NCBI GenBank assembly: GCA_973895155.1
Contig: OZ316899.1
Span: forward strand, 1,015,573 to 1,079,572
Direction: 5' to 3'
DNA: 64,000 nucleotides
Source: Marsupella aquatica
Taxonomy: Eukaryota > Plantae > Marchantiophyta
The first letter of the stretch is position 1, and the number at the start of each line of letters is the position of its first letter. Positions 16,608-61,512 of the stretch are shown here, one piece after another. Under the pieces are notes generated by a model that was given only the letters and a program-made list of their open reading frames with translations, was not told the origin of the DNA and did no database searches. The position numbers and the translations under genes were made by a program.

Positions 16608-17375
16608 CCTTTGGAATTAGTAAGCGACCGTGGAACACACTTCCTCAATGACACCGTAGCACGGCTTACGGAGCGTTACCTAGTCAAGCACCGCAGGACT
16701 ACCCCGTATCACCCTAAAGCCAACGTGCTGACGGAGAGAGCCAATGGTATCATAGGGAAGATCCTCAACAAGACAGTGGCCGTGCACAAAACGGATTGGG
16801 ATGATAAGTTGTACGCAGCGATGTACTCGAATAATCTAGCTTACAAAACTACAACGAGTCATAGCCTGTACTTTCTCGTGTTTGGCCAATATTCGTTGGT
16901 GCCCGTTGAGTTTGAAGTACACACTCCATGAGTCAGCATTCGGGATCGCTTACCCAAACTTGAAAGTTCATCCGACCGAGCTTATCAAATTGAAGCCTTA
17001 GAAGAAGCACGGCTACTAGCAGCTTGGCACGCCGTAAAGCAACAAGCTGCTTTCAAGAAGCAGCACGACAAAGGACTACGGAAGGTCGATGTCATGACAG
17101 GCGATCTAGTCCTGTTGTACGATAGCAGGTACATGCAGTTCCCCGGGAAGCTTTATACCTGTTGGTTAGGGCCTTTCTTGGTCAATCAGATCTACCCTAA
17201 TGGATCTTTGGACCTTGCGACGTACGCCGGCGATTTACTCCCCATGCGAGTCAATTACGATTGTGTGAAGAAGTGCCACCATCAAGACGACGACGTCAAT
17301 AGTGATGTTTGCGAGGACGCTTCACAATTAAGCAGGGAGCTATGTGACATCGCTGGTACGGTGGCTAATAAATGA
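16608..17375 (+). pseudogene. Integrase C-terminal half of A2
   Basis: Close match to the integrase in 47832-50276, with in-frame stops. Confidence 0.9.
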
Positions 17376-29596: not shown

Positions 29597-30900
29597 TTCC
29601 CGGACAGCCTTAGCAGAGCAGGCCAGGCTCGAAAAGGACGCCGAGATCGCATGGCTCCGGACCAAGATTGATGGTTGAAGGGACAAGCCGTCATTTGGCA
29701 GAAGGATCTGGAGGAAGCTGACTCTTGGTCTCAGTGAGACGCAGCCGAGATTGACACCCTGAAGATAGAAGTGGCGCGGCTTCAAGGAGAAGCCACAAAG
29801 TAGGCCTAGTTGGTGGATAAGCTGACGAGCGACATCCAGCAATTGGAGGAGGCATGCCAGGAGACCGCGGAGGAGAGGGACGCGGCAAAGCGAGAGAACA
29901 AATCTCTGTTGGATCAGGTCCAGCTACTCAAGCAGGATGCCGACAGGCTCAGGAGGCAGCGGGATAGCCGCTCCCACTCGGGCGGCTTTGGCAAGCGTGC
30001 TAGGCATTAGCGGTGGAGTAGGATTAAAATAGAGGTAGGAGTAGCTAAATTGGGCTATAGGGACAAGCGCCTGCCCTAGTTAAAGCGGTGTTGCCATACT
30101 GTCCAGCCTGCGTAGATTAGAATCTTCTAATAAGACAAGCCGTTTTCCGGCCTGACAACCAGCTTAGTTAGGATCTTAGTTAGTGAATATTTGGGCTCGA
30201 GGCCACTCCGGTCCTCGGCCCTTAGTATTTAGTGCACCCCTCGGTAGAGGCAAGGGGTTTTTAGTCTCAGAGTTGGACATCCACGGTATATGCGGGGAGT
30301 TCCAACCTCTGTGAGTGAAAGAGTACCAAGGGGAGGGGGTAGGACTAAGCTTGTTGGGCGAGTGCAGAGCCGGGCTCCATTGTAGTGTACACCCTTGGCC
30401 TTGGACCTGTTCATTCAAGAGCTTTTGGGTCAACTAAGTGTACGTGTATGTCCCCTATGTAGTAAAATCCTTTCCCATTATTTTCTTCGTGTAAATCAAG
30501 ATTGTATGCTTGTGTGTGTATATGTGTGAATCTTGTGTATGGGTGCCAACACTTGGCCGAATGCACTACCCAAGCCGTGCACGGGGTGCAGCTTGCGGGT
30601 AAGTGGTCGCGAGCACGGGTTGAGTGACCGTATCATCGAATCTAGATCGAAGGTGGACAACAAGAAGGCTTAAAAGCCCATAAGCAGGGGTCGATCCCGC
30701 TATCAACTAAGGTACGTTCCGGTGGCGGAACACAAACCATACCTAGGAGGTGTTCGTAAGTAACAGTAGATGCACTTAGCGCTAGTTTACGTGAGTTAGG
30801 TGCATTCCGTGCTTTCCTCCCTGCCCGAACCCCCATATTTACGAAGGATGTGCCTGTCTAAGCCAAAGCCCGGGTTAAGGCCTAGGCTGACGACGTGACA
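29597..30900 (+). mobile_element. Distal part of a family A LTR (A3), including the coiled-coil end of the LTR ORF
   Basis: Encodes ..RRQRDSRSHSGGFGKRARH*; ends GACGACGTGACA; no PBS follows. Confidence 0.88.
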
Positions 30901-43610: not shown

Positions 43611-44761
43611 GGTGAATTCTATACTAGTGTATTCCAGGATGCTGAACTCTGATGAATTCCTGTACCATTATCCCCTAGTATATGTCGCCTCTTGCAACAA
43701 TTATGATGTAATTGGGATGTATAGAGAAGCCCTTCGTATTGATTCATGTTACTTAATGAAGAGAATGCCTCTGATGTATCCTGAGAGACAACTAAGATGC
43801 CTACCCTACTCTCGAGGATCCCCACGCCAAGCTGAGCTAATTGAAGTTACACATAATCAGACTGTCACGTCGTAGGCTTCGGCCTTAACTCAGACTTCAG
43901 CTTAGACGGGCACATCCCTCGTAAATCTGAGGGTTCGGGCAGGAAGGGAAGCACGTAATGCACCTTATTCTCGTAAACTAGCGCTAAGTGCGCATACTGC
44001 TAAATATGGACACCTCCTAGGTATGGTTTGTGTTCCGCCGCCGGAACGTACCTTAGTCGATAGCAGGATCGACCCCGGCTTAAGGGCTTCTAAGCCTTCG
44101 TGCTGTCCGCCTTCGATCCGGATTCGATGATACAGGTTCTCAACCCGTGCTCGCAACCACTTACCCGCAGGCTGCACCCTGTGCACGTCTCGGGTAGTGC
44201 GTTCGGCCCGGCGCTGCCACCCATATACGAGAAACCCACACACATATGCGCACACATGCATACAATCTCGATTTACACGAAGGAAAAATGATGGGAAAGG
44301 ATTTTTACTACAAAGGGAACATATGCGTACACTTAGTTGACACGACAGCCCTGGAATGCACAGGTTCAAGGCCAAGGGTGCACACTACAACGGAGCCCGG
44401 CTCCGCACTCGCCCGGCAAGCTTAGTCCTACCCCCTCCCCTTGGTACTCTGTCATTCCTAGAGGTCGGGACTCCCCGCATGTCCCGCGGATGTCCGACTC
44501 TGAAACTAAAAACCCCCCCTGCCTCTACCGAGGGGTGCACTAAATACTAAGAGCCGAGGAACGGGGCGTCCTCCCGCCGAAGATTCGCTGACCAAGGTCC
44601 TAACTAAGCTGACAGTCAGGCCGGAAAACGACTGTGTCTTATTAGAAGATCCTAATCTACGCAGGCTGGACAGCAGGGCAGCGCTGCCGTACCTAAGGCA
44701 GGTGCCTGTCCCAAGAGCCTGACTAAGCCAATCCTAATCCTAATCTATTCCTACTCCGCCG

Positions 44762-47398
44762 CTAATGCCTGGCACGCTTGCCAGAGCCGCCCGAATGGGA
44801 ACGGCCATCCCGCTGCCTTCGAAGCCTGTCATTGTCCGCTTTGAGGAGCTGGACCTGGTCCAGCAGAGATTCGTTCTCTCGCCTCGCCGCGTCCGTCTCC
44901 TCTACTGCCTCCTGACATGCCTCCTCCAGCTGCTGGGCGTCGCTCGCCAGTTTACTCGCCAGCTGGTCCTGCTTCTCGGCCTCGGTTTGGAGCCGCGCCA
45001 TCTCGGCCTGCAGCGTGGCTATCTCCGTCGCGTCCCGCTGGGCTCGCTCCTCGGCCTCCTCCAGGTCTTTCTGCCAGGTGACAGCTTGTTTCTTCAAACT
45101 GTCAATCTGGTTCCGGAGTCGTGTAATCTCGGCCTCGTTCCCAGCTTTGGCCTGTTCGGCTAGGGCGGTAAGAGCGTACGCCTTTGCTAACAACTCATCG
45201 GCGGCTGCAACCTTGGGTCGTAGTTGAAGAAGCTCAGCCTCTTGAGCCGCCACTTCGTTCTTTAGGTACACGGACTCCTCCCGGTACCGCTCTATCCTCT
45301 GAAGGGCCTTCGACTGGGCCCGCCCTGCCTTTACGGCGGCAACCAACTCCTGATTGAAGAAACAGGCTACCTTCCGAGCCATGAACTCCCCGGTATCCCG
45401 GGCAATTTGATGAGAGAAATCTCCCAGAAGCCCGTTCAGAAACGTACCCTGTACGAAGAGTTCCGGGTGGTCCAAGTTGTGCCTGTCCGGATTTGGGCAC
45501 GGGCAGACATCAACACGCGCAGGGGCCGGGGCAGTGACGTCCAGCCCTGGGGACATAACGTTGGAAGGGGCCGGAGTATCCTCCTGCAGCGATGTCCGGT
45601 TCTCCGGAATTGCCACCAGCGGGTCCTTGGGAGACCCGGGTTCGGGTAAGACCTCTGCCGTACCAACTTCTGTACTTAGCCCGGCTAGTTGGGTCGCATC
45701 AACGGTTGCGACGACCGACCCCTCCGACGCCTCCTCGGTTACGATTACAGCTATTTGTGGAGGTGGGGTGGGTAAAGCTGGCGTGTCCACTGGACTTCTG
45801 GCCTCGGGTTGGGGCCGTCTCTCCAATGCCGGAAAAACCCACCTAGCTGGGACCAGCTTTGTAACGTTGATGCGGGGAAGGGTTCGTCGATCAAACCGGG
45901 CATACCACTCAAGAATGATTTCGATGTGGCTAGCGAAATACGCCTTCCCGCCAATGTACAGCGTCTTCCTTCGCCGCTCCATCTCTTCATGGAATTTCTT
46001 AGCGAAGTACGACGCCCACTTCCTAGGTCGATAGTTCTCGACCTGGATGACCTGGGCGGCGGAGATCTCCCCCCGGGGTTCCATCAAGTGGAGAGCGTAC
46101 CTTTGGAACTCCAGCCGCTCAGCTATCTCGGGCATGAGGCAGGTCCTCATCACGAACCCGTTGTCTACTGATCCCTCTGAGGGAAAACTTGAAGATTGGT
46201 ACTTGGCCCCCTTGCCCCCGGGAGCCCGTGATTCGACTCGATGGTCACCTTCGGGTAACCCGAAGATCATCTTGAGCCGTTCTTCTATGAGGGACATATT
46301 CCTTCCCCGCAGCCGAGTCTGTTGACGTACGTCATCATAATTCTTGACGAATTCTGTCATGTCCTCCCCGTAGTACCTGCAAGTGTTCCAGGGGAGAGAG
46401 GCGAGGTGCTCAAATCCCTGAGTCTTCAGGTACACCGCATGCTTGGGATGGAGGATGTTGCTGTGAACGTTTTCCCCCATGCGATGCATCGTTACCTTGG
46501 CTACGGCTACCGTGGCTAACGGTAACCCGGATGCACTGGCGGATTCCTTTCTCTTCTTTCCCCATGACTGACTCGGGGAAGGTGATACTTCCCCATCCTC
46601 CCGATCGGGCCTGGGGAGTGCCACTGCGGTTGGTAACGGGCCCGGGGCGGCCACGGTCACCATGTTGTCTGCTGGGGCCGCTCCTGGGGTCAGAGCAGGG
46701 GGTGGGGACGGTATAGTGTCGGCCCCCCGAGCGCTTGTTCCTCTGGGCCGCCTGGTCAAGGGTGGGGTAGCCTCGTCGTCATCGCTAAGATCCACAGCGT
46801 TGATGACGGAGCGTACCTGTGCTGGCTGGGTGATAGGTGGTGGGGTTTGGCTAGGCTGCGGCTGAGGCTGAAGCTGAAGCTGAGGTTGCATGGGCACGGG
46901 TACGGGTACGGGTCCGGCTGAGTTGGTCATGTTGGTTGATGGCCGAGTTCCCATGAAGCTCTGTAGGTGCTGGTAGAAGTTCTCCGAAGCGAGTGCGGAC
47001 GCCCTTGTCGAACGGTTGGTACTGGACTCGCCGTTAATGACTGCCCGAACCTGGGCAGGGATGTGGTCGAAGTGATGTCGCTGCAGGTCGATTGTACCCG
47101 GGATATTGAAGACCTCGTCCGGAAGCCGAAGCAATGCTTCCCAGAACCCGATATATTTGTCTCCGTCAAAGAAGTACCCAGATACCTCAGCTGGTCGGTA
47201 AAGCTCGCTCTGAGACGGGTAGTCAAAGTTAAGGACGTAGTGGTGTCGTCCTGCTAGGCGGATGGCTCTCTCGTATTCGCGTTCGATCTCGTATCGGCGT
47301 GGGTTGGCGTGTTTCAATGAATCGGCCAAGTGCCTTCCGGTAGATAGGAACTGCGTCCAGAATCGAATGGCCGAGCTGGAGAGGATCGTGTGCGACAT
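44762..47398 (-). CDS. 878-aa LTR-encoded accessory protein (3' LTR copy), function unknown
   Basis: Uninterrupted ORF wholly inside the LTR; FW domain, LPW/FGLP domain, coiled coil, basic tail KRARH; homologues elsewhere in the window. Confidence 0.9.
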   Translation of the reverse strand: MSHTILSSSAIRFWTQFLSTGRHLADSLKHANPRRYEIEREYERAIRLAGRHHYVLNFDYPSQSELYRPAEVSGYFFDGDKYIGFWEALLRLPDEVFNIPGTIDLQRHHFDHIPAQVRAVINGESSTNRSTRASALASENFYQHLQSFMGTRPSTNMTNSAGPVPVPVPMQPQLQLQPQPQPSQTPPPITQPAQVRSVINAVDLSDDDEATPPLTRRPRGTSARGADTIPSPPPALTPGAAPADNMVTVAAPGPLPTAVALPRPDREDGEVSPSPSQSWGKKRKESASASGLPLATVAVAKVTMHRMGENVHSNILHPKHAVYLKTQGFEHLASLPWNTCRYYGEDMTEFVKNYDDVRQQTRLRGRNMSLIEERLKMIFGLPEGDHRVESRAPGGKGAKYQSSSFPSEGSVDNGFVMRTCLMPEIAERLEFQRYALHLMEPRGEISAAQVIQVENYRPRKWASYFAKKFHEEMERRRKTLYIGGKAYFASHIEIILEWYARFDRRTLPRINVTKLVPARWVFPALERRPQPEARSPVDTPALPTPPPQIAVIVTEEASEGSVVATVDATQLAGLSTEVGTAEVLPEPGSPKDPLVAIPENRTSLQEDTPAPSNVMSPGLDVTAPAPARVDVCPCPNPDRHNLDHPELFVQGTFLNGLLGDFSHQIARDTGEFMARKVACFFNQELVAAVKAGRAQSKALQRIERYREESVYLKNEVAAQEAELLQLRPKVAAADELLAKAYALTALAEQAKAGNEAEITRLRNQIDSLKKQAVTWQKDLEEAEERAQRDATEIATLQAEMARLQTEAEKQDQLASKLASDAQQLEEACQEAVEETDAARRENESLLDQVQLLKADNDRLRRQRDGRSHSGGSGKRARH

Positions 47399-47498
47399 TC
47401 AGAGGAGATAGTAGTGGCGACCTAGAGAGAACGAGAGAGCTGGGGTCGAAGCTGGCGCGCGGACTGATGGACTGGTGCACTACAAAGGGTTGGCTCCC

Positions 47499-47506
47499 CT
47501 TTTATA
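47499..47506 (-). promoter_or_regulatory. TATA box candidate upstream of the LTR ORF (also 57588-57595 and 17710-17717)
   Basis: TATAAAAG ~360 nt into the LTR and ~100 nt before the ATG; conserved in A2. Confidence 0.55.
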
Positions 47507-47831
47507 CTTTGAGGGCTTGTCGATCCCCGACGTCTCCTCGACGCCCATAGGTTGAACCGCTCACGCTTGTGGTGTACCGGCCACTCCGCCGGTCTGAGTC
47601 AGCGTGCGTCAGTGGCCGCTTCCTTAAGTTTGTTATACGGACCCGAGGGAGGGGCCACTCCATGCTCATAACCCGGGTGTGCGAATAGCGACCCGCCGCC
47701 AGCCCGAAGCTGAAGTCCCCCTTATTGCCTAATGATGTCCTACCCCTAATGATTACCTAAATACTGTCGTTATGCTAATAATAGCGGCCTAAGACCCACC
47801 TAACGCGCGTGCCGAGCGCAGTTAGACTGAA

Positions 47832-50800
47832 TCACTCATTAACCACCGTACCGGCGGCGTCACATAGCTCCCTGCTTAATTGTGAAGCGTCCTCGCGAAC
47901 ATCGCTATCGGCGTCGTCATCTTGATGGTGGTACTTTTTTACACGATCGTAGCTGATTCGCGTGGGGAGTAAATCGCCGGCATACGTCGCAAGCTCCAAA
48001 GATCCGTTTCGGTAGATCTGATTGACAAGGAAGGGCCCCAACCACCGGGTATGCAGCTTCCCTGGAAACTGCATGTACCTACTATCGTACAGAAGGACTA
48101 GATCGCCTGCCACGACGTCGACCCTCCGTAGTCCTTTGTCGTGCTGCTTCTTCGAAGTTGCCTGTTTCTTCACGGTGTGTCGAGCTGCCAGTAGCCGTGC
48201 TTCTTCCAAGGCTTCAATCTGATAAGCTCGGTCTGACAGACTTTCAGATTCAGGTAAGCGATCCCGAATGCTGACCCGTGGAGTGTGCACTTCAAATTCG
48301 ACGGGCACCAACGAATGTTGGCCGAACACCAGAAAGTACGGGCTATGACTCGTAGTAGTTTTGTAAGCTAGATTATACGAGTACACCGCCGCGTACAACT
48401 TATCATCCCAATCCGTTTTGTGCGCAGCTACAGTTTTGTTGAGGATCTTTCCAATGATACCATTTGCTCTCTCCGCCATCCCGTTGGCTTTAGGATGATA
48501 TGGGGTAGTCTTGCGGTGCTTGACTAGGTAACGCTCCGTAAGCTGGGCTACGGTGTCATTGAGGAAGTGGGTTCCACGGTCGCTTACCAATTCTAAGGGC
48601 GGTCCGAATCGGGTGAAAATCTGTTCGTATAAGAATCTGGCACTGGTTGCGGCGTCGTCCTTTACCGTAGCCCGCGCTTCGACCCATTTGGTGGAGTAAT
48701 CAATAGCTAATAGGATGTATCTGCACCTTCGCCTTCGGGTAACAGGAGTGAACAGTCCGATATAATCAATTCCCCATTTTTCGAATGGTGCCAATGGAAG
48801 CACAGATGTGAGCGGGTGATGATGAGCCCGCCTCGGGGCCCCCGCTCGCTGACACAAGTCACAGCCCTTAATGAAGCGCTGTACATCCCGATGCAACGTA
48901 GGCCACCAATACCCCGAGTCCAGAATCTTTCGGGCTGTCGTAACTGCCGCGAAATGGCCTCCAGCTTCTTCTTCATGCAGGGCCCGTATCACGATAAGTG
49001 TCTCCTTATACTCTAAGCAGCGTCGTAACTTTCCGTTAATACCTTCCTTATGTAGGTGACCCTGTATCATGACGTAAGGCCCGGCTTTCCGTAAAAACAC
49101 AGCGGCGGCCTCCTGATTGATGCCGTCAGGGATGCGGCCCGTTAAAAGGAAGGTGATTATTGAGCCGTACCACGTTGGTGTCCCTTCCCCTACGTGGAAC
49201 AACTCCTCATCCGGAAAAATATCATCAATTGGCTGATCGACTGGTACGCCGTCCAGTCGTGAAAAGAAATCGGCATTGAGGTGTACCCTTCCTGGCCGAA
49301 CCCGAACTTCGTAATTAAATTCCTGGAGAAGTAGCACCCACCGGGCTATCCGTCCTGTCACATCCGCTTTGTTGACCATGTACTTCAGGCTATCATGATC
49401 CGTGTGGAAAATGACCTTGTAGCCTAGCAGATAGTGTCGGAACTTTTTACACGAGTAGATTATTCCCAAAGCTTCTCGATCAGTGGGGGAATAATTCTTT
49501 TCGGCTGCAAATAGTTGACGGCTAGCGAAATAGATGGGGTGATCACGTCCATCCTCATCTAGCTGACTAAGTACGGATCCGATACAGAACCCTGACACAT
49601 CGACATACACGTGGAACTCCTTATTCCAGTCTGGGGTGACCATGATAGGCGCGGTGGTGAGTCGTTTACGGAGTTCCTCAAAAGCAATCCGTCTCCGGGG
49701 TGTTTCCTCGACCGCTGCGTCCTTCTTCATCATCTCAGTTAAGGGCAACGCAATTTTAGCAAAGTCTTTAATGAACCGGCGGTAATACCCTACGCAGCCC
49801 AAGAAGGATCGTACTGCTTTTTGATCCAAGGGGAATACCACCGCCATCCAGGCCGCAACTTTCTCTTGGTCCACCTCAATGCCCCGTTTGGACCCACGAT
49901 GCCCGAGTAACACCCCCTCCTCTACCCCGAAGAAGCATTTGGCGGGATGTAGTTTGAGGTTAACATCTCGGCATCGTTGCAATGTTCGTCGTAGGTGTTC
50001 GGGGTGCATGGCAACGGTTCCGAAGATGGCAAAGTCATCGATAAATATCTCCAAAAATTCCCATAGGAAATCGTGGAAGATATTCATCATAAGGCGCTGA
50101 AACATAGCCGGGGCGTTACACAGACCAAAAGGCATCCTCCGAAATGCGAACGTTCCCCACTCCGTAGTGAACGTTGTTTTGAGCTGATCCGCGAGACGAA
50201 TCCAGATTTGGTTATAACCTGAATACCCGTCAAGAAATGTATAGATTTCATTTCGGGCCACCATATCTAGAACCATATCCGTGAATGGTAATGGGTAATG
50301 GTCTTTTCGGGTTGCGTCATTCAGCTTACGGTAGTCCTGACAGATACGAATCTTAGGTTTTCCATCCGTACCTCCCTTCTTTGGTACAATGACAATGGGA
50401 GAGACCTAGTCGCTGGCCATTACCGGGTAAATGATATCGGCGGCGAGGAGACGATCAATTTCCTCCTTCACTAAGATGGAGTACCTCGGATTCATGCGAC
50501 GTTGTCGCTGTCGTACCGCATGGGCTCCTAGGTTCAGATCGATTGTGTGTTCTCCCAACTCGGGGGAGACGCCTGTTAAATCATGATGACTCCATGCAAA
50601 CACATCTTCATATTCCTTGAGCAAAGCTTGGATGGCTTTTTCAGCCTTCCCCGTCAAAGCGTGGCCCAGGTTAAAAGATTTGTCCATCCCAATAGTGTAC
50701 TTCCGGTAGTGCTCCTTCCTGATGACTTCAACCTGGTTTCGCAGACTCGGGTCCAGGCTCGCGTCAAGCTCAGCTAACCGAACCCCTCCGTACATGGGTG

Positions 50801-53800
50801 GGACCGGGATTGGTCTCGGGATGGGGTTTACTTCCTCCAATTGCGGAATGGACGGATCCCATGAGACTCGCTTTTTATGTCTCGGTCTCGAGTTTTCGGC
50901 CTCAGGCGGTTGTTGGGCTGGTTCATGGTTACAAGGCTCTGAAATGGAAGGAGTAGCCACGGCTCCCTGCTTAGCTGGAGCCGTGTCCTCCGTCTCGACG
51001 AGTTGTTCGTGCGTTTCCTCATCCCCTACAGTAGATGTACTTGGGGTGGACTCAATGGCAGCCCTCGGGTAATTTAGGAGATGTGTTTCTCGGGTTGCTT
51101 CAACTCCGAAGACATCTTCCTCGGATAGGGACGAGATGAGTTCGATCATATTGAGTTCCTCTTCCTCCGAGGTCTCCGAATCATATTCCTCGGGTCCTTG
51201 TGGGGTTTCTCCCTGATAATTGTCCATTGCCCAGGATACCCGTACGGTGGGTTCCCCGAACCGTAGCTCCTTCTTTCCCCAATCCGTGACTACACGGCCA
51301 CCGTACAGCCACGGCCTGCCCAGAAGAACCGGATAAGAGGAGGGACAAACCGGCCTCATGACTAAGAAGTTGAGATAGAACTCTACCCCTCCCACCAGAG
51401 TGAGCACTCGTGTGAGCGTGCCTAATGGGAGGACCCTTGCCCCGTTTGCTAATCTGATAGCTCGGGCCGTGGGTTGATACGTGAGGTATCCTAACTTGAC
51501 TGACGTTTCTTCAGTCATGATGTTGACTCCCGCTCCTCCGTCTACAAGGACCATCTTGATGGTACAGTTATTAATTTCGATCGAGATGTCCGGCGCTCCA
51601 AGGTCCTCGCATATCATGTTGCAGTCCGCACTCCCAACTCGGGGTAGTCTTCTCCTTCGGCGACCCATGAGCAACTCCCTCAGTTGTCGTCTGTACTGTG
51701 GGTTGTTCTGCAGCAGTTGCCCCACCGTCGCTGTAACCGGGCAACTCTTCACGTCCTCCTTAATATCATAGTCCTCCTTTGTTTCTTTCGTTGGCTGCTG
51801 CTTGGCTTCCTCTTGTTTATCTTGCTTTTCTTGCTCCTGACGCCGGGCTGTCTCGGCTGCTTTGATGTCCTTATCGATTGCCTTCTGGTATTCCCGAGCT
51901 TCGTAAGCCTCCAGTTGTTTCTTTACCAATTCTTCGATGCGGGGGAAAAATAGCTTCGGGTCGTCCCGTCGGTAGTCATCGTCCTTTTCCGGGGGTATAT
52001 TTATCGCTGGCTGCACTGGAGTAGTATCTTGCTTTTTCCTCCGTTTCTCCTCCGTCTTTTCTTCCTTCCGTTCGGCCCTTGTCGACACTCGGTAGCACTC
52101 GGCCTCATCCAATGGATTAGGGTGTTCCGCCACGTCCACCAGATTCACCCACTCGGTGTTGTCATCTTGCCATTCTACAGCAATCATTTGGACGACTGCA
52201 TCGCTCGTGACTGGTCCAGCCTGGGCCGGTCTAGCCGCACTCGTTCGAGCAGCGATTACCAACGGACAGTTGGCCGTGGAATGAGCCTCCGTTTTGCAAA
52301 CTTGACATAGTGGGGTGCCTCGGCCATCTCCCTGACGTCTTGGTTCGGTGCATTCCCTCGCAAAGTGTCCTGGCTTTTCACAGTTGTAACAAACCGGGGA
52401 CCGCCAAATCCCTGGCTTAGGAGGGATGCTCGGGTTACTGATAACCTGGAAACTCCGGCCATTACTTGGGTAGGGGTACGCAGTTCTACCCGCTAAATTA
52501 CGCGGACCAACCGTTGAAATCTGGTACACGGAATCAGGAGGGTCCTCAAAGAAATACTCCGTGGACTCCGATTCGGGGCCCGGGTTGTCAACATCATCCA
52601 GCTCTACTTGGTGAACTCGGTTCTTCCACCTTGGGCATTCCTGCACCACATGGCCGGATTGGAAGCACTTTGAACACCATGCATGGGCTCGAATCTCAGA
52701 TGGCTTCTTCTTCTCCACCGGCTTCTCCGCAAGATGTACTGACAGTGCTTTGAGTCGATCCGTGATTTCGTTCAGCTTGTCTGCTTCGGCAGCCTTCGGA
52801 TCTGGTATCGTTCTTCGCGCCCGGGGTTTAATCTTCCCCTCCTTCTTCACTCGTCTCTTCTTCTTTTTGCTCCGGCTTTCGCTCTCCAAGTCACTTCCTG
52901 ATGAACTGGAGGTAGAGGATCCGATGCTTGAAGCTGAATCCGAACTGGATTCCGTCTCGGAGCTGGACGAGGTCGAACGATGTTTCTTCTTCTTCTTCCG
53001 TTTCTTCTTCCTCTCGTCGTCCGATTCGGAGTCACTGTCACTGAAGGTTTCGTACTTACCCTTCCTGCGGCGTGCTCGCTGGCTCCGCCGGGAGTTATAG
53101 GTGGACTCCCGGTAAGTTTCGGCGCACGCTATGGCCGCCTGCATTGAAATTGGATTATTCTGGCGTACCCAGAATTGCATATTCGTGGGCAAACCATGAA
53201 GGAACCATGTAAGCTGGAGCGCGTCTCCTGGCCTGGGCCGAATCTTGGCCGCAAGTTTCTGAAACTTCTGAATGAACTTCCGCAGGGACTCTTTTTTTCC
53301 CATGCGAAGCTGGCCAATCTTTAATAGAGAACGTTGTTCTGATCCAATGGCACGAAACTCCTGCAGCAATGCAGCTTGGAATTGTGCCCAGGTAGTCCCG
53401 GGTGGTAACGAGTTGTACCATGGACGAGCTTCTCCCCGCATTACTCCCGGGAGGACGGTTAGCTTAATGGCCTCTTCCCCATTAGCTTTAGCAGTGGCTT
53501 CAAACTCATCCAACCATTCATCCGGATCATCCCCATGACGCCCTTTGAAAGGTCGATAATGAAATCGCGATCGTTGCGATATTTGTGGAGGCGCCTGAGC
53601 AGCGCGGGCCACCGGTGGAGCGGCTGCCATAGGTGGTGGTGGTGGTGGTGGTGGTGGAACCGCAGCAGGGCCGGTCGAACCGGACCCCGAAGATCCCGGG
53701 GGTATGTTCATACGTCGGGACGATTGCGAGTCCTCCGAGCCCGACGAGTCGGAGCTTGTTGTGGTTGCACTTTCTCGTTCGCTGGTCAATCTCCTCAAGT

Positions 53801-53828
53801 AAGCTGCTTGAGAACGAGTGACGGGCAT
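47832..53828 (-). pseudogene. Single-frame gag-pol polyprotein (~1998 codons) with one premature TAG at 50406-50408
   Basis: Track ORFs 50406-53828 and 47832-50276 are in frame; ASD*VSPIVIVPKK corresponds to RT WVSP; CCHC knuckles, LVDGGAG, FIDDF, RNase H and integrase motifs. Confidence 0.95.
47865..47877 (-). promoter_or_regulatory. Short polypurine tract candidate inside the integrase coding sequence
   Basis: AAGCAGGGAG-CTA immediately before the 3' LTR; identical at 17330-17342. Confidence 0.6.
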
Positions 53829-53920
53829 TTACTCATATAAATGCAATGGTTAGTACTACGTCCTGATGTATCCTGCCTAGGTGAATACGCACATGTCTCC
53901 CCTCTACGATATGTAGAGTG

Positions 53921-53939
53921 CCCCCTCCATCTAGCGCCA
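53921..53939 (-). promoter_or_regulatory. Primer binding site, tRNA-Asn type
   Basis: TGGCGCTAGATGGAGGGGG on the minus strand, 12 nt from the 5' LTR end. Confidence 0.85.
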
Positions 53940-53951
53940 AAACAAAGGCTA

Positions 53952-56900
53952 TGTCACATCGTAGGCTTCGGCCTTAACTCAGACTTCAGCTTAGACGGGC
54001 ACATCCCTCGTAAATCTGAGGGTTCGGGCAGGAAGGGAAGCACGTAATGCACCTTATTCTCATAAACTAGCGCTAAGTGCGCATACTGCTAAATACGGAC
54101 ACCTCCTAGGTATGGTTTGTGTTCCGCCGCCGGAACGTACCTTAGTCGATAGCAGGATCGACCCCGGCTTAAGGGCTTCTAAGCCTTCGTGCTGTCCGCC
54201 TTCGATCCGGATTCGATGATACAGGTTCTCAACCCGTGCTCGCAACCACTTACCCGCAGGCTGCACCCTGTGCACGTCTCGGGTAGTGCGTTCGGCCCGG
54301 CGCTGCCACCCATATACGAGAAACCCACACACATATGCGCACACATGCATACAATCTCGATTTACACGAAGGAAAAATGATGGGAAAGGATTTTTACTAC
54401 AAAGGGAACATATGCGTACACTTAGTTGACACGACAGCCCTGGAATGCACAGGTTCAAGGCCAAGGGTGCACACTACAACGGAGCCCGGCTCCGCACTCG
54501 CCCGGCAAGCTTAGTCCTACCCCCTCCCCTTGGTACTCTGTCATTCCTAGAGGTCGGGACTCCCCGCATGTCCCGCGGATGTCCGACTCTGAAACTAAAA
54601 ACCCCCCCTGCCTCTACCGAGGGGTGCACTAAATACTAAGAGCCGAGGAACGGGGCGTCCTCCCGCCGAAGATTCGCTGACCAAGGTCCTAACTAAGCTG
54701 ACAGTCAGGCCGGAAAACGGCTGTGTCTTATTAGAAGATCCTAATCTACGCAGGCTGGACAGCAGGGCAGCGCTGCCGTACCTAAGGCAGGTGCCTGTCC
54801 CAAGAGCCTGACTAAGCCAATCCTAATCCTAATCTATTCCTACTCCGCCGCTAATGCCTGGCACGCTTGCCAGAGCCGCCCGAATGGGAACGGCCATCCC
54901 GCTGCCTTCGAAGCCTGTCATTGTCCGCTTTGAGGAGCTGGACCTGGTCCAGCAGAGATTCGTTCTCTCGCCTCGCCGCGTCCGTCTCCTCTGCTGCCTC
55001 CTGACATGCCTCCTCCAGCTGCTGGGCGTCGCTCGCCAGTTTACTCGCCAGCTGGTCCTGCTTCTCGGCCTCGGTTTGGAGCCGCGCCATCTCGGCCTGC
55101 AGCGTGGCTATCTCCGTCGCATCCCGCTGGGCTCGCTCCTCGGCCTCCTCCAGGTCTTTCTGCCAGGTGACAGCTTGTTTCTTCAAACTGTCAATCTGGT
55201 TCCGGAGTCGTGTAATCTCGGCCTCGTTCCCAGCTTTGGCCTGTTCGGCTAGGGCGGTAAGAGCGTACGCCTTTGCTAACAACTCATCGGCGGCTGCAAC
55301 CTTGGGTCGTAGTTGCAGAAGCTCAGCCTCTTGAGCCGCCACTTCGTTCTTTAGGTACACGGACTCCTCCCGGTACCGCTCTATCCTCTGAAGGGCCTCC
55401 GACTGGGCCCGCCCTGCCTTTACGGCGGCAACCAACTCCTGATTGAAGAAACAGGCTACCTTCCGAGCCATGAACTCCCCGGTATCCCGGGCAATTTGAT
55501 GAGAGAAATCTCCCAGAAGCCCGTTCAGAAACGTACCCTGTACGAAGAGTTCCGGGTGGTCCAAGTTGTGCCTGTCCGGATTTGGGCACGGGCAGACATC
55601 AACACGCGCAGGGGCCGGGGCAGTGACGTCCAGCCCTGGGGACATAACGTTGGAAGGGGCCGGAGTATCCTCCTGCAGCGATGTCCGGTTCTCCGGAATT
55701 GCCACCGGCGGGTCCTTGGGAGACCCGGGTTCGGGTAAGACCTCTGCCGTACCAACTTCTGTACTTAGCCCGGCTAGTTGGGTCGCATCAACGGTTGCGA
55801 CGACCGACCCCTCCGGCGCCTCCTCGGTTACGATTACAACTATTTGTGGAGGTGGGGTGGGTGAAGCTGGCGTGTCCACTGGACTTCGGGCCTCGGGTTG
55901 GGGCCGTCTCTCCAATGCCAGAAAAACCCACCTAGCTGGGACCAGCTTTGTAACGTTGATGCGGGGAAGGGTTCGTCGATCAAACCGGGCATACCACTCA
56001 AGAATGATTTCGATGTGGCTAGCGAAATACGCCTTCCCGCCAATGTACAGCGTCTTCCTTCGCCGCTCCATCTCTTCATGGAATTTCTTAGCGAAGTACG
56101 ACGCCCACTTCCTAGGTCGATAGTTCTCGACCTGGATGACCTGGGCGGCGGAGATCTCCCCCCGGGGTTCCATCAAGTGGAGAGCGTACCTCTGGAACTC
56201 CAGCCGCTCAGCTATCTCGGGCATGAGGCAGGTCCTCATCACGAACCCGTTGTCTACTGATCCCTCTGAGGGAAAACTTGAAGATTGGTACTTGGCCCCC
56301 TTGCCCCCGGGAGCCCGTGATTCGACTCGATGGTCACCTTCGGGTAACCCGAAGATCATCTTGAGCCGTTCTTCTGTGAGGGACATATTCCTTCCCCGCA
56401 GCCGAGTCTGTTGACGTACGTCGTCATAATTCTTGACGAATTCTGTCATGTCCTCCCCGTAGTACCTGCAAGTGTTCCAGGGGAGAGAGGCGAGGTGCTC
56501 AAATCCCTGAGTCTTCAGGTACACCGCATGCTTGGGATGGAGGATGTTGCTGTGAACGTTTTCCCCCATGCGATGCATCGTTACCTTGGCTACGGCTACC
56601 GTGGCTAACGGTAACCCGGATGCACTGGCGGATTCCTTTCTCTTCTTTCCCCGTGACTGACTCGGGGAAGGTGATACTTCCCCATCCTCCCGATCGGGCC
56701 TGGGGAGTGCCACTGCGGTTGGTAACGGGCCCGGGGCGGCCACGGTCACCATGTTGTCTGCTGGGGCCGCTCCTGGGGTCAGAGCAGGGGGTGGGGACGG
56801 TATAGTGTCGGCCCCCCGAGCGCTTGTTCCTCTGGGCCGCCTGGTCAAGGGTGGGGTAGCCTCGTCGTCATCGCTAAGATCCACAGCGTTGATGACGGAG

Positions 56901-57953
56901 CGTACCTGTGCTGGCTGGGTGATAGGTGGTGGGGTTTGGCTAGGCTGCGGCTGAGGCTGAAGCTGAAGCTGAGGTTGCATGGGCACGGGTACGGGTACGG
57001 GTCCGGCTGAGTTGGTCATGTTGGTTGATGGCCGAGTTCCCATGAAGCTCTGTAGGTGCTGGTAGAAGTTCTCCGAAGCGAGTGCGGACGCCCTTGTCGA
57101 ACGGTTGGTACTGGACTCGCCGTTAATGACTGCCCGAACCTGGGCAGGGATGTGGTCGAAGTGATGTCGCTGCAGGTCGATTGTACCCGGGATATTGAAG
57201 ACCTCGTCCGAAAGCCGAAGCAATGCTTCCCAGAACCCGATATATTTGTCTCCGTCAAAGAAGTACCCAGATACCTCAGCTGGTCGGTAAAGCTCGCTCT
57301 GAGACGGGTAGTCAAAGTTAAGGACGTAGTGGTGTCGTCCTGCTAGGCGGATGGCTCTCTCGTATTCGCGTTCGATCTCGTATCGGCGTGGGTTGGCGTG
57401 TTTCAATGAATCGGCCAAGTGCCTTCCGGTAGATAGGAACTGCGTCCAGAATCGAATGGCCGAGCTGGAGAGGATCGTGTGCGACATTCAAAGGAGATAG
57501 TAGTGGCGACCTAGAGAGAACGAGAGAGCTGGGGTCGAAGCTGGCGCGCGGACTGATGGACTGGTGCACTACAAAGGGTTGGCTCCCCTTTTATACTTTG
57601 AGGGCTTGTCGATCCCCGACGTCTCCTCGACGCCCATAGGTTGAACCGCTCACGCTTGTGGTGTACCGGCCACTCCGCCGGTCTGAGTCAGCGTGCGTCA
57701 GTGGCCGCTTCCTTAAGTTCGTTATACGGACCCGAGGGAGGGGCCACTCCATGCTCATAACCCGGGTGTGCGAATAGCGACCCGCCGCCAGCCCGAAGCT
57801 GAAGTCCCCCTTATTGCCTAATGATGTCCTACCCCTAATGATTACCTAAATACTGTCGTTATGCTAATAATAGCGGCCTAAGACCCACCTAACGCGCGTG
57901 CCGAGCGCAGTTAGACTGAATCACTCATTAACCACCGTACCGGCGGCGTCACA
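53952..57953 (-). repeat. 5' LTR of element A (4002 bp)
   Basis: Direct repeat of 43863-47864; followed by PBS and gag. Confidence 0.97.
54851..57487 (-). CDS. 878-aa LTR-encoded accessory protein (5' LTR copy)
   Basis: Intact; 10 amino-acid differences from the 3' LTR copy. Confidence 0.9.
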   Translation of the reverse strand: MSHTILSSSAIRFWTQFLSTGRHLADSLKHANPRRYEIEREYERAIRLAGRHHYVLNFDYPSQSELYRPAEVSGYFFDGDKYIGFWEALLRLSDEVFNIPGTIDLQRHHFDHIPAQVRAVINGESSTNRSTRASALASENFYQHLQSFMGTRPSTNMTNSAGPVPVPVPMQPQLQLQPQPQPSQTPPPITQPAQVRSVINAVDLSDDDEATPPLTRRPRGTSARGADTIPSPPPALTPGAAPADNMVTVAAPGPLPTAVALPRPDREDGEVSPSPSQSRGKKRKESASASGLPLATVAVAKVTMHRMGENVHSNILHPKHAVYLKTQGFEHLASLPWNTCRYYGEDMTEFVKNYDDVRQQTRLRGRNMSLTEERLKMIFGLPEGDHRVESRAPGGKGAKYQSSSFPSEGSVDNGFVMRTCLMPEIAERLEFQRYALHLMEPRGEISAAQVIQVENYRPRKWASYFAKKFHEEMERRRKTLYIGGKAYFASHIEIILEWYARFDRRTLPRINVTKLVPARWVFLALERRPQPEARSPVDTPASPTPPPQIVVIVTEEAPEGSVVATVDATQLAGLSTEVGTAEVLPEPGSPKDPPVAIPENRTSLQEDTPAPSNVMSPGLDVTAPAPARVDVCPCPNPDRHNLDHPELFVQGTFLNGLLGDFSHQIARDTGEFMARKVACFFNQELVAAVKAGRAQSEALQRIERYREESVYLKNEVAAQEAELLQLRPKVAAADELLAKAYALTALAEQAKAGNEAEITRLRNQIDSLKKQAVTWQKDLEEAEERAQRDATEIATLQAEMARLQTEAEKQDQLASKLASDAQQLEEACQEAAEETDAARRENESLLDQVQLLKADNDRLRRQRDGRSHSGGSGKRARH

Positions 57954-58221
57954 CAGACTATTACCCTTGTGGAGTTACTCGAACCAGAAGACATCCGACA
58001 GCAAGCTTGAGGAGTAGTCTAAGTGTTTTTAGTTAGTTTTAAGAGTAGTGCATCTTATCTGATTTTTATAAATGCGTTCTAGAGCTTTGGAAGCTGTCAT
58101 ACTTCTTCAGTATATAGTTTGTACCTAGGAAAGCCTGCTGGCAAAACCTTTGAGTTTTCTGACTTATAGTTAGGAAGTTAAAAATAGTTGAATTCATCAA
58201 GTCTTTAAGAATACCGCATTA

Positions 58222-60027: not shown

Positions 60028-61512
60028 ATGAGCGGAGTACCTTCAGGTGAAGCGGAGGAAACCGAGGAAGTTCCAAGTCAAGATCTTCACTCTTCCTCTC
60101 TACCACAAAGTGATTACGGGAGTCCACAGAACCCCCGTGTTGGTGCGGTATCTTCAGTTCTAGGATTGTGGACGAGCGGAGGAACACCAGACCAACCAAC
60201 CAGGACTAGACCTGCATACATGAATCTGAGGTTTGGGCCTAAACTCGTCATGCCTTCTCTTAGGGGAAAAAGAAGGACTTTGGCGCAACCGAGTACAACT
60301 TCAGCACAAACTCTGGCAACGTCACCAACACCACCACCACCAGGAGGACTTGCAATGGTGAGCCGGTTGAGAATTCAATACGATTACTTCAGAGGGAAGA
60401 AGTCTAACTTTGAAGCCTGGATGGAGAATTTTGAGGCTGTGGCGATGTCCAACGGAGATGATGCACCGGATATAAAAGCTAAAATTTTTGGAGGTCTCAT
60501 GAGAGGAGAAGCCAGAACATGGTACTCTAACCTGGAAAATACAGCTGATTGGGCTATGGTTAAACCAGAATTTCTGAAGGCCATCCGAGAAGATGGAGCC
60601 ACTGCTCGGGCCTTTACCCGATTGAATTCCATAATGATGAAGAAGGCGGACTCCTTGAGTGGTTACCTCCAAAGGATTAACAGGCTAATCAAGAAAGTTA
60701 CACCAGCTCCACTGGCTTACTTGATCAAGAAATGGTTTATCCAAGGCCTCTACCCTGGACTAAATAAGTTTGTGAGAAGGTCCAATCCTACCACGTTGAC
60801 TGAGGCTTATGATGTAGCTCAATCTTATATAGATGCCAATCTCTCCCAAAGGTCCCAGCTGGCAAAGGAGATAGAAGAAGAAGAAAGGAAAAAGAAAAAG
60901 AAGTCTAAGAAAAAGAAACAAGCCAATTCTTCCTCTTCTGAAGATGATACATCTAGTGAGAGTAAGGACAGTGGAGATGATACAGACAGCACTGATGAGG
61001 AGGAGGTGAAATCCAAGAAAGTGTCCATTGTAAAACATGCAAAAATGGCAAAAAGTGAAGGCAAAATGGTAGACATCATGGAGGGTCTTGCCAAACAGAT
61101 GAAGGGATTGGCAGTAAACCTTGCGATGAATAACCCACCATGGAGGCCCTTACAACAACAGAGGTACAATGTGTGGTGCGCGGTTTGTAAGAAAATGGGC
61201 CATTACCCTAATGAATGCCCTAGCTCAAAGCAAGTGAATTACATTGCAAGTGAAGATTATGAGGGTGAGATGGACTGTGATCCGGAGTTCCAGAGGTATG
61301 AAGATTCAGTGTACCAAGTTCAACCTCAGGGCCTTGTACAATACTTCCCTAGACCACCAGTAAGAGCTCAAGGAGGACCTAATAGACCTGTCTATAAGCC
61401 ACCTATGGCGCCACCAGGAGGATACCCACCACGAGGAACTTTGCCAAGAGGTGTATGTTGGAATTGTGGAGATCAGTCCCATTTTCACCAAATGTCCGTG
61501 GCCAAAGTGTGA
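60028..61512 (+). pseudogene. gag of family G, truncated by the family F LTR insertion
   Basis: FEAWMENFEAVA..GEARTWY gag core, CAVCKKMGHYPNEC and partial CWNCGDQSHF knuckles; the stop codon is supplied by the inserted LTR. Confidence 0.88.

What the first reader, a model, noticed from the sequence alone, without database searches (positions are those of the whole stretch)
43863..57953. An intact 878-aa gene inside both 4-kb LTRs of a complete gypsy element
Seen: TSD CAGAC, TG..CA termini, PBS and PPT positions fix the LTRs at 43863-47864 and 53952-57953. Each holds a full 2637-nt sense ORF, two thirds of the LTR. Established: extra ORFs of Athila/Tat/Ogre elements normally lie in the internal region, between pol and the 3' LTR or upstream of gag. 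Coding LTRs are known from retroviruses (MMTV sag in U3; HIV nef overlapping U3). Inference: this element replicates an accessory gene as part of its LTR, so every insertion carries two copies and every solo LTR retains one. I know of no described plant equivalent but cannot search.
Basis: partly seen in the sequence, partly recalled or inferred. Interest (0 to 1): 0.92.

Follow-up and report, generated by a model that had tools for sequence, protein, structure and literature searches.

The report
Conserved protein gene inside retrotransposon LTRs
A liverwort Ty3/gypsy retrotransposon carries a complete, evolutionarily conserved 878-aa gene with its own TATA box inside each 4-kb LTR; I found no published plant case, and the protein's core folds like the transposon anti-silencing factor VANC21.

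Summary
Two gap-free 4002-bp direct repeats (43863-47864 and 53952-57953, 21 mismatches) have TG..CA ends and a CAGAC target duplication, with a PPT and a PBS inside them. Each holds an intact 878-aa ORF on the element's sense (minus) strand.

The ORF is a real gene:
- Against a ~78%-identical sister LTR in the window, dN/dS is 0.24 overall and 0.10 in the folded core.
- A conserved TATA box lies about 108 nt upstream of its first ATG.
- A conserved AT-rich signal block follows its stop codon.

The layout is not a one-off. Two families in an independent Calypogeia fissa assembly show the same order: LTR start, gene, an identical PBS, gag-pol, then pol ending in the 3' LTR. Two LTR-only loci there, with no gag or pol within 10 kb, also keep the gene.

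The protein has only 41 detectable relatives and no Pfam hit on record. Its core (pLDDT 94) matches one solved structure, VANC21 bound to DNA (TM 0.57). A 220-aa coiled coil follows the core.

gag-pol has one in-frame stop. Where transcripts start and end, and so whether the gene lies in U3, R or U5, is untested. I found no paper describing a gene inside a plant LTR. Verdict: new variant of a known kind, interest 0.72.

The parts
53952..57953 (-). 5' LTR of element A (4002 bp, TG..CA)
   Evidence: Gap-free 99.48% repeat of 43863-47864. Identity ends exactly at both termini.
43863..47864 (-). 3' LTR of element A (4002 bp)
43858..43862 (.). Target-site duplication CAGAC (left)
57954..57958 (.). 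Target-site duplication CAGAC (right)
54851..57487 (-). LTR gene (aORF), 878 aa, intact, copy in the 5' LTR (LTR positions 467-3103). Layout: N-terminal helices 1-122, disordered Pro-rich linker with a KKRK cluster, folded core about 300-505, second linker, coiled coil 650-866.
   Evidence: dN/dS
44762..47398 (-). LTR gene (aORF), 878 aa, intact, copy in the 3' LTR; 10 amino-acid differences from the other copy
57588..57595 (-). TATA box (TATAAAAG) at LTR positions 359-366, 108 nt upstream of the aORF ATG, with no other ATG in between. The same site in the 3' LTR is at 47499-47506.
   Evidence: Conserved in sister LTR B. A similar box with a CT-rich leader stands before relative P0005 in L006.
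54314..54453 (-). The only AT-rich zone of the LTR (GC 0.42, LTR positions about 3501-3640), 400-500 nt after the aORF stop. Candidate polyadenylation region. The same zone in the 3' LTR is at 44225-44364.
   Evidence: GC profile and AGTAAA. Blocks conserved in four LTR copies. Function is inferred.
53922..53939 (-). PBS-like block, 12 nt from the LTR end
   Evidence: Exact 18-mer also at 31348-31365 (+) and 12560-12577 (-) in the window. A 22-nt exact match is found in C. fissa locus L005, and the 13-nt core with identical surrounding sequence in L008 and L011.
47865..47877 (-). Polypurine tract abutting the 3' LTR; it lies inside the end of the pol reading frame
   Evidence: The junction block is conserved in copies B and D and in C. 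fissa.
47832..53828 (-). gag-pol in one reading frame of 1998 codons, broken by one in-frame stop. It has three CCHC knuckles and the order protease, RT, RNase H, integrase. The frame ends 33 nt inside the 3' LTR.
17343..21338 (+). Sister LTR (family B, 3996 bp, 78% identical, collinear throughout), preceded by a pol 3' end at 16607-17342. Its aORF homologue (17816-20453) is decayed, with 2 frameshifts and 9 in-frame stops.
15196..16606 (+). B-type LTR fragment holding the 3' part of the aORF (2 frameshifts, 3 stops)
29604..30900 (+). B-type LTR fragment (3' 1.3 kb, with the end of the aORF, 3 stops), upstream of a PBS (31348-31365) and a gag fragment (31667-31903)
61508..64000 (+). Third, distant family (C). 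An LTR-like start (TGTGAC) is followed about 550 nt later by an aORF-family reading frame (62061 to the window end, one in-frame stop; core 38% identical to A).

Best explanation
Element A is a non-chromoviral Ty3/gypsy LTR retrotransposon of a liverwort, related to elements of Calypogeia fissa. Its LTR is not only regulatory. It contains a whole accessory gene: a TATA box at LTR position 359, a short pyrimidine-rich leader, an 878-aa ORF at 467-3103, and an AT-rich signal zone at about 3500-3640.

Because the gene lies outside the PBS-PPT interval, reverse transcription copies it to both ends of every new insertion. Solo LTRs keep one copy. This much is shown, or follows directly from the LTR replication scheme.

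My inference is that the conserved TATA box is the LTR promoter, so the gene lies in R or U5 rather than U3.
- If the AT-rich zone is the polyadenylation site, R would be about 3.2 kb.
- Transcripts ending in the 5' LTR would then be a monocistronic mRNA for the gene.
- Read-through transcripts would be the genomic RNA.

The product is probably a nuclear, oligomeric, DNA-binding protein: basic KKRK and C-terminal clusters, a VANC21/PMD-like core, and a 220-aa coiled coil. It would act in trans on the family's own LTRs. The most likely role is to modulate their chromatin or transcription state, as VANC proteins do for VANDAL transposons. The function is inferred from fold and architecture only.
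For: Architecture:
- establish the LTRs, the TSD and the termini.
- Searches show two intact sense ORFs.
- One search shows sister LTR B collinear over 4 kb.
- Searches show the same order in two C. fissa families: LTR start, gene, an identical PBS, gag-pol, and pol ending in the 3' LTR. The 3' LTR repeats the first 290-510 nt of the gene up to the locus end.
- Searches show LTR-only loci (L007, L010) carrying the gene. L010 shows that the ~5.1-kb LTR encloses all of it.

Selection:
- A versus B gives dN/dS 0.24 overall.
- By region: 0.10 in the core, 0.17 in the N-terminal domain, 0.22 in the coil, 0.31-0.41 in the linkers.
- The two post-insertion copies of A differ by 5 synonymous and 10 non-synonymous changes.
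- Nucleotide identity along the LTR tracks the protein's domains.

Promoter and terminator:
- TATAAAAG lies 108 nt before the first ATG and is conserved in B.
- A similar box with a CT-rich leader stands before the 41%-identical relative in L006.
- The only AT-rich dip comes after the stop, with blocks conserved in four LTR copies.
- A second TATA-like string downstream is not conserved.

Protein:
- AF2 model of the core has pLDDT 93.7 and pTM 0.90.
- Foldseek against PDB gives one meaningful globular hit, VANC21 with DNA: prob 0.99, TM 0.57, 240 columns. All other hits to the core model have prob 0.02 or less. It is again the only globular hit for the full-length model.
- VANC is reported as structurally homologous to the PMD protein MAIN and as oligomerising through a coiled coil (PMC13547354).
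- PMD domains are known in angiosperm gypsy elements (PMC5418596).
- Short motifs are over-represented on one strand in the noncoding LTR flanks: (A)TTAGGA in A and C, and a TAAGCGCTTA-type palindrome in C. fissa.
Against: - No transcript data exist, so the TSS, the polyadenylation site and therefore the U3/R/U5 assignment are unverified. A 3.2-kb R would be unusually long.
- With the gene as the first cistron, how gag-pol would be translated from the genomic RNA is unexplained.
- The VANC21 match is fold-level only: 8% identity, Foldseek E 0.015, rmsd 5.3 A. No sequence or profile link exists to any PDB chain. No Pfam hit is on record for relatives P0042 and P0023.
- The motif enrichment was noticed by eye before it was tested, and the same motif does not recur in L005. 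Repeated motifs are also common in LTRs in general.
- The PBS-like block lies 12 nt from the LTR end in A, which is further than usual.
- This copy has a stop in gag-pol, so it is probably not autonomous now.
Confidence: 0.55

Rival explanations
1. The gene is a nested cassette in U3. Genomic RNA would start from a TATA-less promoter in the last ~400 nt of the LTR, so only the 3' LTR copy is part of the genomic RNA. This is the position of MMTV sag or HIV nef. The gene would be expressed from its own upstream TATA box or from a spliced RNA.
For: - The last 200 nt of the LTR are well conserved between A and B (84%), as expected for a compact R-U5 and att end.
- The AT-rich terminator-like zone lies upstream of that segment, so the cassette could be self-contained.
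- The pol frame and PPT overlap the LTR start, as in retroviruses with coding U3.
- This model avoids a 3.2-kb R and the first-cistron problem for gag.
Against: - The only conserved TATA box in the LTR is the one upstream of the gene.
- The TATATG string downstream is not conserved in B-type copies.
- No polyadenylation-like signal zone is seen in the last 350 nt.
Confidence: 0.3
2. The gene is a genuine LTR-borne accessory gene, but its product is not a VANC-like DNA-binding regulator. It could instead be a structural or RNA-handling factor comparable to Ogre ORF1, Retrosat2 ORF0 or Athila ORF1, for example in particle assembly, nuclear traffic or RNA export.
For: - Plant gypsy elements often carry extra ORFs of unknown role next to gag (PMC7264820; PMC3485330).
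- The Athila domain is also reported to oligomerise through long coiled coils.
- The fold match is modest and there is no sequence-level link.
Against: VANC21 bound to DNA is the only globular structural match, and nothing resembles capsid, envelope or RNA-binding folds. The gene has its own promoter-like and terminator-like signals, which suits a trans-acting factor.
Confidence: 0.3
3. The ORF is a functionless passenger, such as a captured host gene fragment or a chance open frame that hitch-hikes in a long LTR.
For: The family is tiny in databases: 41 hits among 1.84 billion representatives. It has no Pfam annotation. Older copies in the window are decayed.
Against: - dN/dS is 0.10-0.24, with the domain-wise pattern expected for a folded protein.
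- The same three-part architecture is kept at 32% identity in P0042.
- The gene is kept in at least five families in two genera.
- Every genomic context examined lies within or beside retrotransposon sequence; L009 was not resolved.
Confidence: 0.04
4. The 4-kb repeat is an assembly artefact, a segmental duplication, or two separate elements flanking a third.
For: The window is a dense nest of retrotransposons.
Against: - The termini are exact, with a 5-bp TSD.
- The PPT and PBS lie at the inner edges.
- The repeats carry 21 scattered mismatches and are not identical, and the window has no N.
- The same layout recurs at several loci of an independent assembly of another genus.
Confidence: 0.01

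Closest known systems
Extra ORFs of plant Ty3/gypsy elements next to gag (Ogre ORF1; Retrosat2/RIRE3/RIRE8 ORF0)
   Same: A sense-strand accessory ORF sits 5' of gag in an element with very long (3-5 kb) LTRs. Its function is unknown and it evolves faster than pol (PMC3485330; PMC7264820).
   Different: Those ORFs are described as lying in the internal region, upstream of gag-pol. Here the ORF lies upstream of the PBS, inside the repeat itself, so it is present twice per element and in LTR-only copies. No sequence similarity was found.
VANC21, the anti-silencing factor of the VANDAL21 Mutator-like DNA transposon (PDB 9lnj)
   Same: It is the only solved structure that the folded core resembles: prob 0.99, TM 0.57. 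Both are transposon-encoded accessory proteins with a globular domain plus a coiled coil. Both elements carry short repeated motifs in their noncoding regions.
   Different: Identity is 8% with no profile-level match. The carrier is a retrotransposon of a liverwort rather than a dicot DNA transposon. DNA binding and anti-silencing are untested here.
Plant mobile domain (PMD, PF10536) proteins: MAIN/MAIL1 and the gypsy-encoded PMD-A clades
   Same: PMD is known to be carried by angiosperm gypsy elements. VANC is reported as structurally homologous to MAIN. The core here may therefore be a very distant PMD-like fold.
   Different: No Pfam hit is on record for relatives P0042 and P0023. No PMD structure or model was available for direct comparison. 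The published PMD surveys I read cover angiosperms only.
Retroviral genes inside or overlapping the LTR (MMTV sag in U3, HIV/SIV nef overlapping U3)
   Same: Coding sequence lies inside the terminal repeat. The pol end and PPT overlap the LTR start, so the repeat is duplicated together with coding capacity.
   Different: This comparison rests on general knowledge and was not tested here. No homology was found. The conserved TATA box lies upstream of the gene, so the gene may sit in R or U5 rather than U3. The whole gene with its own signals is inside the LTR.
ATHILA ORF1 (PF03078)
   Same: It is an accessory protein of a non-chromoviral plant gypsy lineage, reported to oligomerise through extended coiled coils.
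   Different: It could not be compared, because no structure or sequence of it was reachable with the tools. The Athila ORF is internal, not in the LTR.

Membership tests
LTR retrotransposon, Ty3/gypsy (Metaviridae) | Two near-identical direct terminal repeats with TG..CA ends and a 4-6 bp target-site duplication | tested here: met
   4002-bp repeats, 99.48% identical, TG..CA ends, CAGAC on both sides
LTR retrotransposon, Ty3/gypsy (Metaviridae) | PBS next to the 5' LTR and PPT next to the 3' LTR | tested here: met
   A purine tract abuts the 3' LTR. The 18-nt TGG-initiated block is conserved across families and genera, but it lies 12 nt from the LTR end in A, and the primer RNA was not identified.
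LTR retrotransposon, Ty3/gypsy (Metaviridae) | gag with CCHC knuckles and pol in the order protease, RT, RNase H, integrase | tested here: met
   Three CCHC knuckles and that domain order are read from the translation. Homologues carry RVT_1, RT_RNaseH, Integrase_H2C2 and rve. There is one in-frame stop.
Chromoviruses | Chromodomain at the integrase C-terminus | tested here: not met
   No chromodomain family appears among the Pfam lists of the 120 closest homologues. This is indirect, because no Pfam scan of the protein itself was possible.
Tat lineage (liverwort 'Z2' type, without the extra RNase H) | RT phylogeny with Tat; presence or absence of the added archaeal-type RNase H | not tested
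   No REXdb or DANTE was available. PMC13468544 reports liverwort Tat-like elements lacking that domain. The 814-aa C-terminal part of pol leaves no room for it.
Internal additional ORFs of plant gypsy elements (Ogre ORF1, Retrosat2 ORF0, Tat/Athila 3' ORFs) | The ORF lies in the internal region, between PBS and PPT, once per element | tested here: not met
   The ORF lies wholly inside both LTRs, outside the PBS-PPT interval, in A, in B and in C. fissa families.
PMD / VANC fold | Sequence-profile membership (PF10536 or detectable similarity to VANC or MAIN) | tested here: not met
   No Pfam hit is on record for P0042 and P0023. Neither phmmer nor the family profile finds any PDB chain, VANC21 included.
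PMD / VANC fold | Same three-dimensional fold as VANC21 | tested here: met
   Core model pLDDT 93.7. 9lnj_A gives prob 0.99, TM 0.57 normalised to the query, 240 columns and rmsd 5.3 A. It is the only non-noise hit.
VANC-type anti-silencing system | The protein binds short motifs repeated in the noncoding DNA of its own element and removes silencing marks | not testable with these tools
   Strand-biased motif over-representation occurs in the LTR flanks, but it was found post hoc and the motifs differ between families.
PF20167 (putative plant transposon protein) | Profile similarity to a PF20167-bearing protein | tested here: inconclusive
   hhalign of family alignment A1 against P0134, the one PF20167-annotated protein the tools returned, gives probability 1.4%. 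This was a single-sequence target.
PF03078 (ATHILA ORF-1) | Similarity to Athila ORF1 | not testable with these tools
   No Athila ORF1 sequence or structure was returned by any search.
Retroviral U3-encoded accessory genes (sag, nef type) | The ORF lies in U3, downstream of the PPT and upstream of the transcription start | not testable with these tools
   The transcription start is unknown. The conserved TATA box is upstream of the ORF, which argues against U3.

The most novel reading that the evidence does not exclude
In a whole lineage of liverwort gypsy elements the LTR is a self-contained gene. The LTR promoter drives a VANC/PMD-like DNA-binding protein, and R is about 3 kb long. The choice of polyadenylation site in the 5' LTR decides between accessory mRNA and genomic RNA. 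Every solo LTR remains a dispersed expression unit for a factor that acts in trans on the family's own LTR motifs to counter silencing. This would also place retrotransposon-borne PMD-like domains at the base of land plants, which bears on where host PMD silencing proteins came from.
Probability: 0.2. Interest if true: 0.88.

Novelty: new variant of a known kind. Interest (0 to 1): 0.72.

Why it matters
LTRs of plant retrotransposons are treated as non-coding regulatory repeats. LTR finders, annotation pipelines and solo-LTR analyses all assume so.

This lineage carries a selected protein gene with its own signals inside the repeat. Several consequences follow.
- Gene dosage is doubled at each insertion.
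- The gene survives the LTR-LTR recombination that removes gag-pol.
- Hundreds of solo LTRs could keep supplying a trans-acting factor.
- LTR-based age estimates mix coding and non-coding sites.
- Gene predictors will call these ORFs as host genes, as the C. fissa annotation does.

If the VANC/PMD-like fold reflects function, this would be a retrotransposon counterpart of the VANDAL anti-silencing system in an early-diverging land-plant lineage. It would also be a lead on the origin of PMD proteins. The question is directly testable with existing liverwort RNA and methylome data.

Tried and rejected
**Searches that gave nothing**
- Word-indexed protein search with the whole protein and with residues 296-560: no hits. 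The exhaustive search was needed.
- Exact look-up of the protein: not on record, so the source genome's proteins are not in the collection.
- PDB sequence searches with the protein and with the family profile: only coiled-coil noise, or nothing.
- NCBIfam: only SMC-type coiled-coil noise.
- BFVD fold search: nothing credible.
- hhalign against the one PF20167-annotated protein in hand: no relation.
- tRNA scan of the window, to find the primer: none.

**Ideas rejected or left unresolved**
- That a shift of the PPT captured a 3' internal ORF. The pol-end/PPT/LTR-start block is conserved in A, B, the relative D and C. fissa, so that boundary looks old.
- That element D (5293-15197, pol 61% identical to A) is a clean short-LTR sister lacking the gene. 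This is only partly usable. Its terminal repeats align for 838 bp, but its PBS lies 1.78 kb further in and its 3' repeat looks truncated. It has no aORF-family similarity.
- TTAGG as a universal target motif: not replicated in L005.
- The Logan contigs L001, L003 and L004 could not be classed as RNA or DNA, so they give no expression evidence.

- Outputs of my scripts list HSP or open-frame bounds of broken copies. The places of breaks can be read from these.
The dN/dS pooled codon counts from separate in-frame HSPs without building a sequence.
Full report
**1. The observation**

The window holds two gap-free 4002-bp direct repeats, 43863-47864 and 53952-57953, with 21 mismatches (99.48%). Identity stops exactly at both ends. 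The termini are TG..CA, and CAGAC flanks both sides.

All long ORFs are on the minus strand. The 5' LTR is therefore 57953 down to 53952, and the 3' LTR is 47864 down to 43863.

Each LTR contains an intact ATG-to-stop ORF of 2637 nt (878 aa) at LTR positions 467-3103. The two copies differ at 15 nt, 5 synonymous and 10 non-synonymous, which is what neutral drift after insertion predicts.

Between the LTRs, gag-pol (47832-53828) reads in one frame of 1998 codons with one in-frame stop. It has three CCHC knuckles and the order protease, RT, RNase H, integrase.

The pol frame ends 33 nt inside the 3' LTR, so the polypurine tract is coding. A TGG-initiated 18-nt PBS-like block lies 12 nt from the 5' LTR end.

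The one correction is that the element is structurally complete but not fully intact.

**2. Host and lineage**

The pol protein's best named relatives are from liverworts: Calypogeia fissa (68-70% identity), Riccia sorocarpa and Marchantia. Homologues carry RVT_1, RT_RNaseH, Integrase_H2C2 and rve, and none lists a chromodomain.

A recent survey reports liverwort Tat-like elements without the extra RNase H (PMC13468544). I could not run an RT classification.

**3. The ORF is a gene**

The window holds a diverged sister LTR, family B (17343-21338, 3996 bp). It is collinear with A's LTR from first base to last at 78% identity, and it follows a pol 3' end at 16607-17342. Its copy of the ORF is decayed, with 2 frameshifts and 9 stops.

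The substitutions separating it from A are still strongly biased:

| Region of the protein | dN/dS, A versus B |
|---|---|
| Whole ORF | 0.24 |
| Folded core | 0.10 |
| N-terminal domain | 0.17 |
| Coiled coil | 0.22 |
| Two disordered linkers | 0.31-0.41 |

Nucleotide identity in 200-nt bins follows the same pattern. It is 86-90% over the core and coil and 66-70% in the 3' non-coding stretch.

Two further B-type LTR fragments carry the end of the ORF (15196-16606 and 29604-30900). The second lies upstream of a PBS and a gag fragment. The ORF-bearing LTR is thus seen next to a pol end, and an LTR fragment with the ORF's end is seen upstream of a gag start.

**4. The layout is a lineage trait**

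An exhaustive HMMER search found only 41 relatives among 1.84 billion representatives. The named ones are all 'unnamed protein product' of C. fissa.

Loci from that independent assembly show the following.

- L005 and L011 are one family. The LTR starts with TGTGAGG and the gene begins about 980 nt into the 5' LTR. A 22-nt match to A's PBS follows in L005, and L011 carries the same core with identical surrounding sequence. Then comes gag-pol, with pol 66-70% identical to A and ending in the 3' LTR. The 3' LTR repeat runs to the locus end and covers the first 330-510 nt of the gene.
- L008 is a second family with the same order.
- L007 and L010 carry LTR sequence with the gene and have no gag or pol within 10 kb. 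L010 shows that the LTR extends about 5.1 kb and encloses the whole gene.

More distant family members lie downstream of pol on the same strand: L002, and a second element in L008.

In the window, a third family (C) has an LTR-like TGTGAC start at 61508 and an aORF-family frame from 62061 to the window end.

No copy was seen with the gene only between PBS and PPT.

**5. Signals around the gene**

TATAAAAG lies at LTR positions 359-366, 108 nt before the first ATG, followed by a CT-rich leader with no other ATG. It is conserved in B. A similar box and leader stand before the 41%-identical relative in L006.

The only AT-rich dip in the LTR (GC 0.42) lies at positions 3501-3600, 400-500 nt after the stop. 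It contains blocks conserved in four LTR copies. A TATATG string just beyond it is not conserved.

The simplest reading is one promoter upstream of the gene and a polyadenylation zone downstream of it, both inside the LTR. If these also serve the genomic RNA, the gene lies in a roughly 3.2-kb R. A 2-kb R has been predicted in silico for rice Retrosat2 (PMC3485330).

The alternative is a nested cassette in U3 with a TATA-less genomic promoter in the last 400 nt. This cannot be excluded without transcript ends.

**6. The protein**

AF2 with the family alignment gives five regions:
- moderate-confidence N-terminal helices at residues 1-122;
- a disordered Pro/Gln-rich linker with a KKRK cluster;
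- a folded alpha/beta core at about 300-505;
- a second disordered linker;
- a coiled coil at 650-866.

The core modelled alone reaches pLDDT 93.7 and pTM 0.90.

Foldseek against PDB returns one meaningful hit, VANC21 of VANDAL21 bound to its target DNA (9lnj_A). It has prob 0.99, TM 0.57, 240 columns and 8% identity. Every other hit has prob 0.02 or less. It is again the only globular hit for the full-length model.

There is no sequence-level link, no Pfam hit on record for relatives P0042 and P0023, and no relation to a PF20167-annotated protein.

According to PMC13547354, VANC is structurally homologous to the PMD protein MAIN and oligomerises through a coiled coil. PMD domains are known cargo of angiosperm gypsy elements (PMC5418596). 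VANC proteins bind short repeated motifs in the noncoding DNA of their own transposon.

Here, (A)TTAGGA is the most over-represented short word in the noncoding LTR flanks of A. It occurs 10 times forward and never in reverse, against about 1.4 expected. It is also enriched in family C. The C. fissa LTR flanks instead carry about 20 copies of a TAAGCGCTTA-type palindrome. I found this post hoc and treat it only as a lead.

**7. Comparison and novelty**

The nearest known arrangements fall into four groups.
- Extra ORFs of Ogre, Retrosat2, Tat and Athila elements. These are described as internal.
- PMD carried by angiosperm gypsy elements.
- VANC of DNA transposons.
- From general knowledge, retroviral genes in or overlapping U3.

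The present case differs from the plant precedents in the defining point: the gene lies outside the PBS-PPT interval, inside the repeat. Seven literature searches found no description of a gene inside a plant LTR. The library does not cover everything.

I classify this as a new variant of a known kind. The architecture is well supported, at about 0.9. The expression model and the function are inferred.

**8. Declared slips**

- Script outputs show HSP or open-frame bounds of broken copies.

Noticed in passing
window 53922-53951; 31348-31365; 12560-12577; L005 14148-14169; L008 13656; L011 13445: The same PBS-like block (TGGCGCTAGATGGAGGGG), always preceded by a T-run, is shared by families with only 61-70% pol identity and by two genera. 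In A it lies 12 nt from the LTR's terminal CA, further than usual. No tRNA gene is in the window, and the primer RNA is unidentified.
   Followed up: partly
window 30901-31347: In the B-type copy next to a gag fragment, 447 nt of unique sequence separate the A-type LTR end (30900) from the PBS. The roughly 45 nt just before that PBS resemble the sequence before element D's PBS rather than A's. This may be an insertion, a longer U5, or a recombinant.
   Followed up: partly
window 5293-15197 (minus strand): Element D is a related gypsy element (pol 61% identical to A) that shares the pol-end/PPT/LTR-start block. Its terminal repeats align for only 838 bp (5293-6129 and 14361-15197, 95%), yet its PBS lies 1.78 kb further in. 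That stretch holds a 208-aa ORF unrelated to the aORF family. D abuts, and probably truncated, a B-type LTR at 15196/15197.
   Followed up: partly
window 60028-62131: A gag-like ORF (60028-61512, 33% identical to A's gag) ends exactly where an LTR-like TGTGAC start begins (61508), with no pol in between. The expected matching 5' LTR is not found upstream. This may be a deletion derivative or a chimera. Element A is inserted about 2 kb to its left.
   Followed up: partly
window 21339-29596; 32915-34391; 37141-38620: Another retrotransposon family has ~1.5-kb LTRs (83-88% identical copies at 21339-22800, 28106-29596, 32915-34391 and 37141-38620) and a distant gypsy pol at 25142-26973. The window is a nest of at least five LTR-element families.
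   Followed up: no
window 1267-3151 (+): Degenerate remains of a further aORF-family gene (HMM E 2.6e-14 and 0.008), on the strand opposite to neighbouring element D.
   Followed up: no
A LTR flanks (57488-57953, 53952-54850); C 61508-62060; L005 and L008 LTR flanks: Family-specific short motifs are piled up in the noncoding parts of the LTRs and are nearly absent from the ORF and the internal region. In A and C the motif is (A)TTAGGA, on one strand only. In C. fissa it is a TAAGCGCTTA-type palindrome. Upstream of the ORF in L001 there are two telomere-like TTTAGGG units.
   Followed up: partly
L010 12098-17134: In C. fissa, the 3' 1.68 kb of the gene-bearing LTR is tandemly repeated three times next to two head-to-tail LTR copies, with no gag or pol nearby.
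   Followed up: no
C. fissa records CAM6086213.1, CAM6101870.1, CAM6082161.1 and others: The public annotation of Calypogeia fissa calls these LTR-borne ORFs, whole or in pieces, as ordinary protein-coding genes ('unnamed protein product').
   Followed up: no
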